Below, piece by piece: positions 21,228 to 30,207 of a stretch of 64,000 bases of DNA. This DNA is from Gracilinanus agilis (lineage: Eukaryota). Under the pieces are notes generated by a model. The model was not told the origin of the DNA. It did no database searches and was given only the letters and a program-made list of their open reading frames with translations. The position numbers and the translations under genes were made by a program. The stretch spans positions 7,688,211 to 7,752,210 of the forward strand of contig NC_058132.1 in NCBI RefSeq assembly GCF_016433145.1. The letters are read 5' to 3'. How positions within the stretch are numbered: position 1 is the stretch's first letter; every line of letters begins with the position of its first letter.

Positions 21228-21260
21228 ATGGCTTCTGGGTGGCTGCCTGTCAGGCTCCAG
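21228..21260 (+). CDS. Gene 1 (KRAB-hAT fusion) first coding exon, MASGWLPVRLQ (exon 21190..21260)
   Basis: Acceptor ttccctccag at 21189; ATG 21228; donor CAG|GTGAGT, phase 0; same size and position as the MAAGLLLPRAQ leader of gene 2. Confidence 0.8.
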
Positions 21261-23719
21261 GTGAGTCATTGTCCTTCTCTCTGTTCCTGGATGGTCTTGG
21301 CTCGTCTGAGTCCGATGCACAGATCTGGGGCTCTGTGACTCTCCCCCAGAACATTTGGGCCATTCGGATGGATGAAGACTCCCCTGATTTCCCGAGCTCA
21401 TATGTCAGATGTTGGTAACCCCTATTACATTTCATCATGTTAGAGTCTGCCAGGGGCTGGCAAAGCATGGCCGAGGGCCAGATGTGGCTGGCACCTGTTT
21501 TTGTTCGTCCAGTTCTGAATCTGAGCTCTTGGGGAGTGCAGATTCTGACTTCCAGGGGCTTAGCCCATCCCGAGGTGATGTTTTAGGGGCCCTTTGGGAG
21601 AGGATAGGCAGGATCTGTTATCAGTAAAGCGAATCTTCATGTGGTACCAAGCCTCATGCCACGTGGGGTCCAGGGAGTGGAAGGAGGAGCCACAGAATGA
21701 CCCAGGGCAGAGCTGAGAGATCTTGGGGCCTGCCAGGGCTGATCCAACCCACTGTGGTAAACACTGAACACCTGCTAAGTGTGGGCACTGTGCCACGTGC
21801 TGGGCATGCAGTTACTAAAAAGGCCAGCCCCTGCTCTCCAGGCCCTTACAGCAGAGAGGCAGATGCCCGCCCACCCCTGGAAGGAGCTCCCCACCACAGT
21901 CTGGATTCAGCCTCTGCTCGGAGACCTTCCATGGGGAAAACTCACTTTATTCCCTCCTGGGAAAGCCAAGCTTGTCCTGGCCCCAGGCCCGAGTTGGCCC
22001 CTTGGCAGCTTCCTCCCAGTGCTCTGGGTTCTGCCCTTCCCTCAGGGTTAACCCCTCATCCAGGAGCTCTTCCTTTGGTCAGTCGTGCCCCTCCTGAGCC
22101 TTCTCCCCAGGTTGCCCATCCTTATTCCACTCTGTCACTCCTCAAATGGCACGGACTGAAGACCTCCTCTGGACACCCTCTAGGCTACCAGTGACCCTCC
22201 TAAACAGTGACACTCAGAGCTGGATGTGAGGTTCTCACCTCCTTCCTGCTGTAGCCTTTGGGATTGGGCTCTGGGCTGGTCCCCTCAGGCACTCTCAGAT
22301 GGGTTGGAGTCTTCTTAGACCAGATGCCAGTCTGGAAGAGGCAGCTGGGGCTGGGCCTTCCCCCTCAGGATTCATGCCTGGCTTCTGCCTCATTCTCCTG
22401 GCTGTCCGCTGTGGATTCGGGCCTCCACTGGTTCCTTCTTCCACGGCAGACCCTCGGGGGATTCTGGAGGTCATGCTGGTCTCTGAACAACATGAACAGC
22501 CCTCTCAAGGCTGGCATCTGTATGTGGGTGTCCCAGAGTGCTCAGAGGAGCAGAATCCTGCCCCAGTGGCCTGGGGGAGCTGCCCTGGCCCCTCCCCTCC
22601 TGCCCTGGTACTTGTTGGGGATTCTTTCTGACCTCTTTATCTTTCCCACTCGTGCCAGTCACCAGAAGGTACACCAACCCGCACCTGGCCAGAGGGTCTG
22701 CCATTCCTCCAGTTGGAGCCACAGCCCCATGCTCGGGCGCCATTTTCCTAGAGAGCCCACAACTCCAGATCTCCAGCCCTTGTCTTCTGTGGGCAGGCAT
22801 GAGGAGGAGCTCAGCCGCGTCCTGTTGCCGTGGGTCCCTGCCCTAGAGCTGGCTGTCTCCTTCCAGAGCCTCTCTTATGCCCACACGAGTCACTGAAAGC
22901 AGGGAATAGTCACCCTCTTGCCCAGCTCGATGCCTGTCTTGGCCTCACTCTTCAGTTATGATTCAGCAGACAGTTAGTCGCCCCCCGACCCCCACTTCTC
23001 TTCTTCCTGGAGTCACATCAGGAGGCCAGAACAGAGGAAGGCCTGAGCAAACATAGAGCTGGGGAGGCCAGAGGAGGCCACCCACAGGACCCTAGAGGTA
23101 GAAGGGACCTCAGAAACCCTCTAGCTACCCCCATCTTACAGATGAGAAAGCCGGGGACCAAAGCTTTTGTCCTTGACCAGAGATCATGGCCTCCCCGGTG
23201 TCTATGACCCGTACCTGGCACAAGGTAGCTTTGGAGCCCCCGAACGGGGATTCAGACTTGTGATTAGATCCTAGAGTCCCACAAGCCAAGCACCCCCGAA
23301 ACTTAACCCCCATGTCCAGCCTGGGCTGAGGGGGGCAGGGACTTGGGAGCAGCTGGAGCATGGGCCCATGTGCCGAGAGGCCAGCTTAGGTGACGCCTCG
23401 GATGCCCTGGGCCAGAAACACTGAGCTCCCCAGCTCCCAGGCTCTCGGTGGGGCACAGAGCCCTAGAAGGCTTAATACACAAGTCAGGGTGCATGGAAGA
23501 AATGCTTAGAGCCCAGGAGGAATGGGCCAGCCCATAGAAGAGGATGAAAACTAGAAATATCTCCTTTCTCCAGGAAATGCTGAGGGGGCCTCATCAGCCA
23601 TAGCTCTGCCCACCCAGCTATAAGAAAAAGCCTCCAGTGCTTTAAGAACCTCTCCTGGATCACCCAAGGACACTGGGAGGGATGGTCCCGGCTGAGCGGG
23701 GCTGTGTTTGGTGTTTCAG

Positions 23720-23846
23720 CATCCAGTGACCTTCAGGGATGTTGCCGTGGACTTCTCGCTGGAGGAGTGGAGACGCCTGAGCCCGGCTCAGCGGGACCTA
23801 TACAGGGAGGTGATGCTGGAGAACTATGAGAACCTGGTCTCTGTGG
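23720..23846 (+). CDS. Gene 1 KRAB-A exon
   Basis: 127-nt exon, gtgtttcag|...G|gtgagg; [42 protein letters not shown]. Confidence 0.97.
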
Positions 23847-23860
23847 GTGAGGACAGCTGC

Positions 23861-27401: not shown

Positions 27402-27538
27402 ATTCCCTTCGGGAGCCTCCAGGGACTTTGGCCGCCAGAAGTGGACCCAACGACACCGGCCCGTGTCCCGAGGCAGGAGGACGCGGGGGAGGAAGGGCAG
27501 AGGGCCAGGGCGGCCCTCCCCGGAGCGCCGCGAGCCAG
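27402..27538 (+). CDS. Gene 1 linker exon (phase 1 to phase 0), DSLREPPGTLAARSGP...PPRSAASQ
   Basis: Acceptor tctttcctcag at 27401, donor CAG|GTGAGT at 27538/9; 137 nt, open, and exactly the phase needed to join KRAB-B to the transposase exon. Confidence 0.75.
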
Positions 27539-28029
27539 GTGAGTGTCCCTGAAGGCGAGACCTCCGGGAGCCCTTCAGTCGGGGCCAGCCTCCGTCCTGG
27601 TTCCGATCCAGACTTGAGAGAGGGATGGAGAAGGTGGGAGTAGCGAGGATGGCCCAGCCCAGCCGGGCTGACCCTGGCGTCACAGACACACGCGTGACGG
27701 CGTCGGCTTTGGCCCTCCTTGCTGACCCGAATGAAGCGAGCCGCCTGCTTCGCGTTGGAATCCCGTTCCTGCACTCGTTCGCCCACTCCAGGCCTCATCG
27801 GGCATTTCTCGGCAGTCCGGCGGTGGCGCTGCGGTCAGCCTTGGGATGAGAAAGCCCGATAACGAGTTCTGCAAAAAAGGTGTAGGTGAAAAGGAAATGC
27901 GAGCTAATCCAGGACTTTAGCGTCAAGTGGTGCCATTCCAAAAATCACATAGAGAAAGCGTTACCAGAATTTTGTAATAATCCTCAGCCAGTGTGACTTT
28001 TACTAACCTAACATGAAATTGTTTTTCAG

Positions 28030-30207
28030 ATCATTTTCCCCAAAACACCAAAACGACAAAGCGATCTCTTGGGTTTTTTGAATGTAAAGAAGGTGAAAAC
28101 AGAGACAGAAAACAAGGGCAGGAAGGAGAATCCTTGCGAAGCTCTGACGCCGACGGGAGCCGCTTTTGGGTCCGCCGAACAACCCATCGCTGCAGAAAAG
28201 CCATCGTGTTCGCCAAAGGAGGACGGCGACAGCCTTTTGCTTCCGGACTGTTGGAACAAAAAACAAGCATTTCTGTTTACAGAGCAGTACAAGTGGCTTG
28301 AAATAAAAGGAGGTAAACTAGGCTGTAAGGATTGTTCCACGGTTCGGCACTTGGGAGTGGCGGCAGAAAAGCACGTCCATGTCTCCAAGGAGTGGAGCGC
28401 TTACTTAATAACCCCAAATGGCAGTAACAAAGTCACGAGGCAGGCGGCTCTGAGAAAGAAAATCAGGGAACACGACGTTTCCAAAGCCCACACGAAAATC
28501 CAGAATTTACTGAAAGAATCCGCTGACGACTCCATCTCAAATATAGTACGTAAACTAAACAATAAAAATATTGATGCTACCGTAAGGGTCTTCCAAACGG
28601 TTTATGGCTTAGTAAAGCGCAACCGGCCCTTATCGGATATTGAGGGGGCCATAGAAGTTCAGGAGAAAAACGGCGTAGACATAGGCAGCTGCCTACGGAC
28701 ACGGTACAGCGCCACGAGGATAGCGGAACACATCGCGAAGGAGATTCGGATGGAGCTCTTCAAGAGCATCGTAGAAGAGGAGGCCAAAATCTGCGTCATC
28801 CTCGATGAGGTGGCCACGATTTCGAAGAAGAGCACTCTAGTGATCCATCTGCAGTGCGAGGCTCCGTCTTCCCCTGCACCCACCATGGTCTTTGTCGCTT
28901 TAAGAGAATTGGCGTCCACCACCGCCCAGTGCGTCTTCGACACTCTGTTGTCTACTTTGGACGACTGCGGCTTCACGAATGACTATTTGAAAGCGAATTT
29001 AATTGCGTTTTGTTCTGATGGCGCTAGTAAAATTCTGGGAAGAAAGTCCGGACTACCTGCAAAGGTATTAGAAAACTTTCCCAAAATCATCTTTTGGCCC
29101 TGTTTAAATTATCGGTTGCAGTTATCACTTGATGATTCAATATCGGAAATAAAACAAGTTAATCATTTAAAAATGTTTCTGGACAAAATGTGTTCTATTT
29201 ATCACCAATCCAATAAAAACCAAACTGAATTAGAAACTGTCGCTAAAGAACTTGAAATGGAAATAATTAAAATCGGCCAAGTCCTGGGCCCAAGATGGGC
29301 AGCATGCAGCTTACGCGCTGCTACTGCTCTTTGGCATGTATATCCTACGTTATATTCCCGTTTTTCCCATTCTTCTTCTTATTCTGGTTTGGTGAAGAGA
29401 TTAGCTAACGTTCATTTCTTGCAAGACCTTGCTTTAATGATTGACATTCTTGAAGAGCTTTCATTTCTTTCAACTGCGATGCATTTGCAGTCGAGATCCA
29501 CTGACATTCAGAAAGCACAAAAATTAATCAAATGCACCATCAAAGCTTTAGAAAGATTAAAGATCGTCCCAGGAAAGCATGAATCTCAGGTGGAAGATTT
29601 GATGAAGTCAGATAAGTTTAAAGGCATTCCATTTAATAAAAACAATACACTTCATCCTCTTCCTAGGAGTACGTTACTGGAAAATATAATTCAGCACATG
29701 AATTTGTGTCTCTTATCGGATGATGAGAACATTTTTCATTATTTTGATTTACTAGAACCATCTACTTGGTCTTTTGAGCAAGTAACTTCACCATGGAGAG
29801 CTGGTGAAAAAAACTTATATCGCTTAAGTGAAATTTTAAAATACGAAATTGATTTGGATGATTTTCGTAATTTTGTAGATAATGTAGAATCAAACAATGT
29901 TCCAATACCTGCAACAATCCAGAAAGCTAAAAAAATCATTAGCATCATTGCCATCGATACAGCTGAAGCTGAGAGAGGTTTTGGTTTAATGAATATGATT
30001 TGTACGAGGGTGAGAAACAGTTTAACAGTAAAACATGTATCAGATTTAATGACAATTAATTTATTGGGAAAAGAATTAGCAGATTGGGATGCAACTCCGT
30101 TTGTCAAATCATGGTTAAATTGCAACCATAGGCTGGCTACAGATACGAGGGTTCGGCAGAAGTCAACGAGAGCATTCTGTAAGAATCCATTGGCTCTATG
30201 GAATTGA
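28030..30207 (+). CDS. KIAA1586: Gene 1 terminal exon: intact domesticated hAT transposase, KIAA1586 homologue (TTF-type Zn finger, DDE core, C-terminal dimerisation motif)
   Basis: 725 codons without stop; branch point TACTAAC 28001-07 and acceptor gtttttcag at 28029; motifs CKDC...HDVSKAH, ILDE (28804), SDGA (29017), PRW (29293-98), AEAERGF (29971). Recalled human KIAA1586 shares e.g. [50 protein letters not shown]. The symbol denotes homology; orthology is unproven. Confidence 0.92.

What the first reader, a model, noticed from the sequence alone, without database searches (positions are those of the whole stretch)
21228..30207. KRAB-A/B fused in frame to an intact KIAA1586-type hAT transposase: a marsupial KRAB-transposase gene
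Seen: five exons with canonical splice sites and compatible phases (0, 1, 1, 0) give one ~858-aa ORF: leader, KRAB-A, KRAB-B, linker, then 725 aa of hAT transposase in place of the usual C2H2 array. The KAP1-contacting KRAB-A motifs (DV, EEW, MLE) are intact, and the transposase exon has no stop over 2.2 kb while other TEs in the window are decayed or non-autonomous. Established: KRAB recruits TRIM28/KAP1, and KRAB-transposase fusions exist as a class (ZNF862, POGK, bat KRABINER). Inference: this is a repressor that uses a transposase Zn-finger/dimerisation module, possibly targeting TIR-derived sites. I do not know whether this exact fusion has been catalogued.
Basis: partly seen in the sequence, partly recalled or inferred. 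Interest (0 to 1): 0.9.

Follow-up and report, generated by a model that had tools for sequence, protein, structure and literature searches.

The report
Marsupial KRAB–hAT transposase fusion gene
This opossum locus holds a real gene, conserved across all the marsupial orders sampled, that joins a KRAB repressor domain to a domesticated KIAA1586-type hAT transposase; it is a new example of a known way of making transcription factors and is mis-annotated in this genome.

Summary
Exons 21228-21260, 23720-23846 (KRAB-A), 24352-24453 (KRAB-B), 27402-27538 (linker) and 28030-30207 have AG/GT sites and phases 0,1,1,0. They give an 858-aa ORF.

The window is Gracilinanus agilis. RefSeq's model here lacks KRAB. 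The same architecture is present at orthologous loci in Monodelphis, koala, Dromiciops, bilby and Tasmanian devil. There the KRAB exons are 127 and 102 nt, and linker lengths are always 2 mod 3.

- **Selection:** omega is 0.34 for KRAB, 0.75 for the linker and 0.19 for the transposase exon.
- **Start codon:** the ancestral transposase Met is replaced by I/T in all six KRAB-type genes.
- **Fold:** the exon-5 protein folds like Hermes hAT transposase and keeps the family's conserved zinc-finger residues and putative D-D-E.
- **Not KIAA1586:** it lacks the ZNF451-type tandem SIMs, so it is not the eutherian SUMO-E3 gene.
- **Not the other marsupial copy:** it is also distinct from a second, KRAB-less marsupial copy that lies beside an SMC gene.
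- **Not catalogued:** it is absent from Table S3 of the Cosby et al. preprint.

The most likely function is a KAP1-recruiting, sequence-specific repressor. This is inferred; no RNA or binding data were available.

One extra result: the same splice acceptor is used with different host N-terminal modules in eutherians, marsupials and the worm lizard Rhineura.

The parts
14766..14859 (+). Likely first coding exon of the long isoform. It sits in a GC-rich island, and a further in-frame ATG lies at 14733.
   Evidence: tblastn gives 87% identity to residues 1-31 of the Monodelphis protein P0126. The ATG, a phase-1 GT donor at 14860 and the in-frame upstream ATG were read from the sequence. GC is 0.62 over 14-16 kb.
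21190..21260 (+).
   Evidence: The exon is 92% identical to Monodelphis residues 32-55. An AG acceptor lies at 21188-21189 and a GT donor at 21261. The leader aligns with the N-termini of the koala, Monodelphis, Petaurus and Dromiciops proteins.
23720..23846 (+). KRAB-A exon (127 nt, ends in phase 1).
   Evidence: Pfam KRAB E 9.5e-27, full-length match. The exon is 127 nt in all six marsupials.
24352..24453 (+). KRAB-B exon (102 nt, phase 1 to phase 1).
   Evidence: AG/GT sites. The exon is 102 nt in all six species and aligns with the orthologues.
27402..27538 (+). Linker exon (137 nt, phase 1 to phase 0), probably disordered.
   Evidence: The same frame is used in RefSeq's own model P0001. 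Orthologous exons are 137, 197, 200, 200, 221 and 221 nt, all 2 mod 3. Omega is 0.75.
27792..27881 (+). Optional in-frame 90-nt cassette exon, used only in RefSeq's G. agilis model.
   Evidence: P0001 residues between the linker and exon 5 map here. The exon is absent from the orthologues' models.
27992..28029 (+). Branch-point (TTTTACTAAC) and polypyrimidine tract with the acceptor, carried by all KIAA1586-type loci.
   Evidence: Homology with the Rhineura and Monodelphis-paralogue loci starts at 27992-27995. The same motif lies upstream of the exon in the bilby, devil, wombat, Rhineura and sloth loci.
28030..30207 (+). Domesticated hAT transposase exon (725 codons plus stop). It holds a disordered basic N-terminal stretch, the family's conserved C-x2-C and two-His zinc-finger residues, an RNase H-like core with an all-alpha insertion, and a C-terminal hAT motif.
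   Evidence: Open frame. 100% identical to P0001 and 73-75% to eutherian KIAA1586. AlphaFold2 pLDDT 75; Foldseek's top solved-structure hit is Hermes transposase at E about 1e-8. Putative D259, D330 and E648 are conserved. Omega is 0.19.

Best explanation
This is a single-copy host gene that has been kept at least since the last common ancestor of living marsupials. The leader, KRAB-A, KRAB-B and linker exons come from a KRAB zinc-finger gene cluster. They are spliced, through an acceptor carried by the transposon-derived sequence itself, onto one exon that encodes a complete domesticated KIAA1586-type hAT transposase. It most likely works like other KRAB-transposase fusions: the transposase N-terminal zinc finger and its dimerising body choose DNA sites, and KRAB recruits TRIM28/KAP1 to silence them. 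Shown here: the gene structure, orthology, frame conservation, purifying selection on both halves, the hAT fold, and retention of the zinc-finger and putative D-D-E residues. Inferred: actual splicing in vivo, KAP1 binding, the DNA targets, and whether the retained catalytic residues still act on DNA.
For: - **Model:** canonical splice sites give one ORF.
- **Orthologues:** the same architecture is found at collinear loci in Monodelphis, koala, Dromiciops, Macrotis and Sarcophilus. Proteins with this architecture are predicted in RefSeq and UniProt.
- **Frame:** linker lengths differ only by multiples of 3.
- **Selection against omega = 1:** KRAB 0.34 (2dlnL 34.9), transposase exon 0.19 (2dlnL 607), linker 0.75 (2dlnL 6.9). 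By three-point pairwise arithmetic, the G. agilis branch itself has omega of about 0.1.
- **Start codon:** the ancestral start Met (PK-M-PKRQ) is kept in eutherian, second-marsupial, Rhineura and caecilian genes but is I or T in all six KRAB-type genes. The first in-frame ATG in exon 5 is codon 241 in Gracilinanus and codon 286 in Monodelphis. The constrained zinc-finger region therefore needs upstream coding exons.
- **No other partner:** no C2H2 array or remnant lies between the KRAB exons and 51 kb, so these selected KRAB exons have no other downstream partner.
- **Fold:** Hermes at E about 1e-8 with probability 1.0. The next AlphaFold DB neighbours after KIAA1586 are ZNF862, ZMYM1, SCAND3, ZBED5 and Ac.
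- **Not a mobile copy:** no flanking terminal inverted repeats and no other copies in the fetched loci.
Against: - No transcript data could be examined.
- RefSeq's model for this very genome (P0001) skips the KRAB exons and starts in a GC-rich stretch at about 26.8-27.3 kb.
- KRAB-less isoforms (for example P0128, P0007) and a KRAB-only isoform (P0125) are predicted in other species, so the fusion may be one product among several.
- The linker is only weakly constrained.
- The Sarcophilus KRAB-A acceptor is shifted by 1 nt relative to the others.
- The H of the hAT CxxH motif is Y in both didelphids.
- KAP1 binding and DNA targets are untested.
Confidence: 0.78

Rival explanations
1. There are two units, not one. 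The transposase exon is expressed from an internal promoter in the GC-rich 26-28 kb stretch as a KRAB-less protein, as in RefSeq's model. The KRAB exons are a relic or make only a short KRAB-only product.
For: RefSeq model P0001 lacks KRAB. GC is 0.60 over 26-28 kb. KRAB-less and KRAB-only isoforms are predicted elsewhere.
Against: - The 5' exons of P0001 are not conserved outside didelphids. There is one weak hit in a Monodelphis intron and none in three other orders.
- KRAB omega is 0.34, with 2dlnL 34.9 against neutrality.
- Phase and linker length are conserved in six species.
- The ancestral Met is lost throughout the clade.
Confidence: 0.12
2. It is simply the marsupial orthologue of eutherian KIAA1586, a ZNF451-family SUMO E3 ligase, as its database name says.
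For: 73-75% identity to eutherian KIAA1586 and the same exon boundary. The RefSeq name.
Against: - The eutherian N-terminus with the tandem SIMs is absent and KRAB stands in its place. SUMO E3 activity of this family is attributed to those SIMs (PMC8952880).
- The KRAB clade, the second marsupial clade and the eutherian clade are each supported 100/100 and their order is unresolved.
- The locus is a KRAB zinc-finger cluster.
Confidence: 0.05
3. It is a recently inserted, still autonomous hAT transposon that happens to lie in an intron of a KRAB zinc-finger gene.
For: The ORF is intact and D-D-E is retained. Multi-copy relatives exist in the beetle Ignelater.
Against: - The gene is orthologous and collinear in six species of five orders.
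- The gene tree follows the species tree.
- Omega is 0.19.
- There are no terminal inverted repeats.
- Homology between paralogous loci ends about 38 nt upstream and about 24 nt downstream of the coding exon.
Confidence: 0.02

Closest known systems
KIAA1586 (eutherian, ZNF451-family SUMO E3; a host-transposase fusion in Cosby et al.)
   Same: The transposase exon is 73-75% identical, the branch point and acceptor are homologous, and the zinc-finger and putative D-D-E residues are conserved.
   Different: The N-terminal module is KRAB-A/B instead of tandem SIMs. It forms a separate 100/100 clade. The ancestral Met is lost.
ZNF862 (mammalian KRAB-hAT fusion)
   Same: KRAB joined to a full-length hAT transposase. 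It is the best structural neighbour after KIAA1586 itself, at E 5.9e-28.
   Different: Only 20% identity, so it comes from a different hAT lineage and a different capture event. ZNF862 spans mammals including monotremes according to Cosby Table S3.
KRABINER, POGK, KHATD1 and KHATD2 (KRAB-transposase fusions, Cosby et al.)
   Same: They share the birth mechanism: host KRAB exons are spliced to a transposase exon. For four such fusions sequence-specific repression was shown (abstract read; table).
   Different: The transposon families and host lineages differ. No functional data exist for the marsupial gene.
Rhineura floridana SCAN-KRAB-KIAA1586 (RefSeq XP_061476354, P0131)
   Same: The same hAT lineage (80-85% amino-acid identity), the same acceptor, and a KRAB-containing host module.
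   Different: It has an added SCAN domain, keeps the ancestral Met, lies in a squamate SCAN-KRAB-ZNF cluster, and has a much shorter synonymous branch.

Membership tests
KRAB-transposase host-transposase fusion (HTF) gene | A KRAB domain of host origin | tested here: met
   Pfam KRAB E 9.5e-27. KRAB-A is 85% identical to that of the neighbouring KRAB zinc-finger gene. The closest N-termini elsewhere belong to marsupial KRAB zinc-finger proteins and ZFP28-like proteins.
KRAB-transposase host-transposase fusion (HTF) gene | A transposase-derived domain fused in frame | tested here: met
   One ORF across canonical junctions. The frame is kept in six species.
KRAB-transposase host-transposase fusion (HTF) gene | RNA evidence for every junction (the criterion used by Cosby et al.) | not testable with these tools
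   No transcript data were available. Only predicted RefSeq and UniProt isoforms of orthologues were seen.
KRAB-transposase host-transposase fusion (HTF) gene | Purifying selection on the transposase part across species more than 50 My apart | tested here: met
   Omega 0.19, 2dlnL 607. Pairwise values are 0.12-0.20.
hAT superfamily transposase | RNase H-like core interrupted by a large all-alpha insertion domain (Hermes-like fold) | tested here: met
   Hermes structures 4d1q, 6dwz and 2bw3 at E about 1e-8, probability 1.0, TM-score by target 0.5-0.63. The secondary-structure order is given.
hAT superfamily transposase | D-D-E catalytic triad and CxxH motif | tested here: inconclusive
   D259, D330 and E648 are conserved and sit on beta-1, just after beta-4 and on the helix after the insertion domain. 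They were assigned by topology, not by a residue-level alignment to Hermes. The H of CxxH is Y in Gracilinanus and Monodelphis.
hAT superfamily transposase | Pfam hAT dimerisation or DUF4371 domains | tested here: not met
   The local Pfam scan of exon 5 gives nothing even at E up to 10. Relatives carry precomputed PF27073, PF14291 or PF05699 hits.
hAT superfamily transposase | Terminal inverted repeats and 8-bp target-site duplication (a mobile element) | tested here: not met
   Only short chance inverted repeats were found, none flanking the exon. This is expected for a domesticated copy.
ZNF451/KIAA1586 SUMO E3 ligase family | N-terminal tandem SUMO-interaction motifs | tested here: not met
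   The eutherian N-terminal block is absent from all KRAB-type marsupial proteins. The family definition is taken from PMC8952880.

The most novel reading that the evidence does not exclude
One hAT lineage carries its own branch point and acceptor a few codons upstream of its start codon. It may have been captured independently several times by different host modules: tandem SIMs in eutherians, KRAB in marsupials, an unrelated short leader beside an SMC gene in marsupials, and SCAN-KRAB in the worm lizard Rhineura. At least the Rhineura capture would be far younger than the amniote ancestor, which implies horizontal spread of an element almost identical to the source of the mammalian genes. 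The marsupial gene would then be an independent repressor-type counterpart of the eutherian SUMO-ligase-type KIAA1586.
Probability: 0.45. Interest if true: 0.7.

Novelty: new member of a known kind. Interest (0 to 1): 0.55.

Why it matters
- **A missing entry:** it adds a KRAB-hAT fusion, present in all five marsupial orders examined, to the known set of transposase-derived transcription factors. It fills a gap in the reference catalogue, probably because Pfam does not see the transposase domain.
- **An annotation error:** the database names are misleading. This genome's model omits KRAB, and 'E3 SUMO-protein ligase' is unjustified without the SIM module.
- **A natural experiment:** the same transposase body is attached to a SUMO-ligase module in placentals and to a repressor module in marsupials. 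This could show what the KIAA1586 transposase body itself contributes, for example DNA targeting.

Tried and rejected
- Local Pfam on exon 5 gave no family.
- A profile search of solved-structure sequences gave no hit at E up to 1. The fold search was needed instead.
- Look-ups of koala isoform X2 and of the devil KRAB zinc-finger protein P0138 were not on record.
- Biopython's ML dN/dS timed out and was replaced by NG86, YN00 and IQ-TREE codon models.
- The order of the KRAB, second-marsupial, eutherian and Rhineura lineages could not be resolved. The fork is open. KRAB plus the second marsupial clade are sisters at only 67/86, and 'all mammals one clade' is not rejected (p-AU 0.25). Duplication versus independent capture within mammals is therefore left open.
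- No remnant of a parental C2H2 array was found downstream of exon 5.
- Literature searches combining KIAA1586 with KRAB and transposase found nothing, and the other searches gave nothing on this fusion.
- Only the preprint version of the Cosby table was read, not the published one.
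Full report
**What is there**

Every internal junction is AG/GT and the phases are 0,1,1,0. Pfam recognises a full-length KRAB box in the second exon's frame at E 9.5e-27. The 2178-nt last exon is the only long ORF in the region.

A database search identifies the window as Gracilinanus agilis. 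Exon 5 is 100% identical to the RefSeq protein 'E3 SUMO-protein ligase KIAA1586 homolog' (P0001) and 73-75% identical to eutherian KIAA1586.

P0001 itself has no KRAB. It starts in GC-rich sequence at about 26.8 kb.

**Is the KRAB-transposase join real?**

Models from Monodelphis, koala, Petaurus, Dromiciops, Macrotis, Notamacropus and Sarcophilus all carry KRAB-A, KRAB-B, linker and transposase, and all but the devil model share the short leader.

I fetched five orthologous loci and mapped their exons.
- KRAB-A is 127 nt and KRAB-B is 102 nt in all six species.
- The linker is 137, 197, 200, 200, 221 or 221 nt, always 2 mod 3.
- The transposase exon is 2178-2196 nt.
- Splice sites are conserved. 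The only exception is the devil KRAB-A acceptor, which is shifted by 1 nt.
- Unique non-coding matches are collinear on both sides of the gene, so the loci are orthologous.

Codon models on the species tree give omega 0.34 for KRAB (2dlnL 34.9 against omega = 1), 0.75 for the linker (2dlnL 6.9) and 0.19 for the transposase exon (2dlnL 607).

Two further observations from the sequence argue for obligate use of upstream exons.
- The ancestral start Met in 'PK-M-PKRQ' is kept in eutherian, second-marsupial, Rhineura and caecilian genes. It is I or T in all six KRAB-type genes. The first in-frame ATG of exon 5 is codon 241 in Gracilinanus and codon 286 in Monodelphis, which lies beyond the conserved zinc-finger residues.
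- No C2H2 array or remnant lies between the KRAB exons and 51 kb, so the selected KRAB exons have no other partner.

The non-KRAB 5' exons of P0001 are not conserved outside didelphids.

A conserved coding exon lies at 14766-14859 and joins 21190-21260 in phase.

**What the transposase part is**

The local Pfam copy and a sequence search of solved structures find nothing.

An AlphaFold2 model built from a 37-sequence alignment has pLDDT 75 and pTM 0.64.
- Among solved structures it matches Hermes hAT transposase best, at E about 1e-8 and probability 1.0.
- Among Swiss-Prot models the order is KIAA1586, then ZNF862, ZMYM1, SCAND3, FAM200/ZBED5 and maize Ac.

Conserved family residues include C99 and C102 (both invariant) and H148 and H154 (nearly invariant and invariant). 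These form a C-x2-C plus two-His zinc finger. Also conserved are D259/E260, D330 and E648. In the model these three acidic positions lie on beta-1, just after beta-4 and on the helix that follows the all-alpha insertion. That is the D-D-E layout of RNase H-like transposases. This assignment is by topology, not by residue-level superposition.

The H of the CxxH motif is Y in both didelphids. No terminal inverted repeats flank the exon.

**Relation to other KIAA1586-type genes**

The protein tree gives three 100/100 clades.
- KRAB-type marsupial genes; their branching order agrees with the accepted marsupial species tree.
- A second, KRAB-less marsupial gene.
- Eutherian KIAA1586.

These three, together with a very short Rhineura branch, meet at an unresolved fork. 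AU tests do not discriminate between the possible orders.

The second marsupial gene lies beside an SMC-type gene in both Monodelphis and wombat. That is a different place from the KRAB zinc-finger cluster that holds the window's gene.

Eutherian proteins carry the ZNF451-type N-terminus. The literature holds this N-terminus, with its tandem SIMs, responsible for SUMO E3 activity (PMC8952880). The marsupial KRAB-type proteins lack it, so 'SUMO ligase' is not justified for them.

Rhineura isoform X1 is SCAN-KRAB-KIAA1586 and sits in a SCAN-KRAB-ZNF cluster.

All these loci share only the coding exon plus about 40-60 nt upstream and about 24 nt downstream. The shared upstream part holds the branch point, the polypyrimidine tract and the acceptor.

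Synonymous divergence between Rhineura and Australidelphian KRAB-type genes is 0.37-0.41, and between Rhineura and a sloth it is 0.33. This is no larger than the divergence among marsupial orders (0.33-0.39). In a third-position tree the Rhineura terminal branch is 0.056, against 0.22 for the sloth. This is hard to reconcile with 320 My of vertical descent. It points to a later, independent capture, probably after horizontal transfer. Multi-copy relatives in the beetle Ignelater fit that picture.

Whether the three mammalian genes are duplicates or independent captures remains open.

**Origin of the KRAB exons**

A canonical KRAB zinc-finger gene lies downstream on the same strand. Its KRAB-A is at 51537-51659 (85% identical to the fusion's), its KRAB-B is at 51768-51866, and at least 13 fingers lie at 53981-55327.

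The closest N-termini elsewhere are marsupial KRAB zinc-finger proteins and ZFP28-like proteins. One devil protein aligns through KRAB and into the linker.

**Known or new**

Table S3 of the Cosby et al. preprint lists KIAA1586 as Eutheria-only with no host domain. Its KRAB-hAT entries are only KHATD1, ZNF862 and KHATD2. Its marsupial entries are all Tc1/mariner. Literature searches found nothing on this fusion.

The architecture is visible in automatic RefSeq and UniProt predictions, so it is annotated but apparently undescribed. I rate it a new member of a known kind.

**Mechanism**

By analogy with the KRAB-transposase fusions tested by Cosby et al., the most likely function is sequence-specific, KAP1-dependent repression directed by the transposase DNA-binding and dimerising body.

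This is inference. Splicing in vivo, KAP1 binding, DNA targets and any residual nuclease activity are all untested.

Noticed in passing
window 51537-55327 (+): A canonical KRAB zinc-finger gene lies downstream on the same strand. KRAB-A is at 51537-51659 and is 85% identical to the fusion's KRAB-A. KRAB-B is at 51768-51866. At least 13 C2H2 fingers lie at 53981-55327, interrupted by the N run at 54494-54664.
   Followed up: partly
window 26700-27900: RefSeq's G. agilis model (P0001) starts in this GC-rich stretch and omits the KRAB exons. Its 5' exons are not conserved outside didelphids. It also uses a 90-nt in-frame cassette exon at 27792-27881.
   Followed up: partly
window 14700-15260: Several tandem copies of the short 'MWA..GGE.EH.QR'-type coding motif lie in the GC-rich island that holds the likely first exon (tblastn hits at 14766, 15110, 15138 and 15183).
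   Followed up: no
L007 10001-19332 (Rhineura floridana): A SCAN-KRAB-KIAA1586 fusion whose transposase exon is 81% identical in DNA to the opossum's. Its synonymous branch is 4-8 times shorter than those of the mammalian lineages, which suggests a recent capture after horizontal transfer. It also has a stop 9 codons earlier than the mammalian genes.
   Followed up: partly
L006 and L009 (Monodelphis, wombat): A second, KRAB-less KIAA1586-type gene in marsupials lies tail-to-tail with an SMC-family gene of 1288/1291 aa. In wombat, glider and possum it starts at the ancestral Met or the equivalent position.
   Followed up: partly
proteins P0050, P0051, P0054, P0056, P0067, P0068, P0071 (beetle Ignelater luminosus): Multiple different copies are 61-73% identical to the opossum transposase on separate beetle contigs. 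This suggests a multi-copy element of the same hAT lineage in an insect.
   Followed up: no
window 28030-30207 compared with orthologues: The G. agilis copy has raised GC3 (0.43 against 0.27-0.34) and a third-position branch about 3.5 times longer than Monodelphis. Its linker exon is GC-rich and 60 nt shorter. This may reflect GC-biased conversion near a chromosome end. Selection is not relaxed: branch omega is about 0.1.
   Followed up: partly
L005 10001-34445 (Dromiciops): The annotated fusion gene shares its start coordinate with an upstream 714-aa KRAB zinc-finger gene (KRAB-A at 26724, fingers at 33195-34445). This hints at shared 5' exons or a shared promoter between a zinc-finger gene and the fusion.
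   Followed up: no
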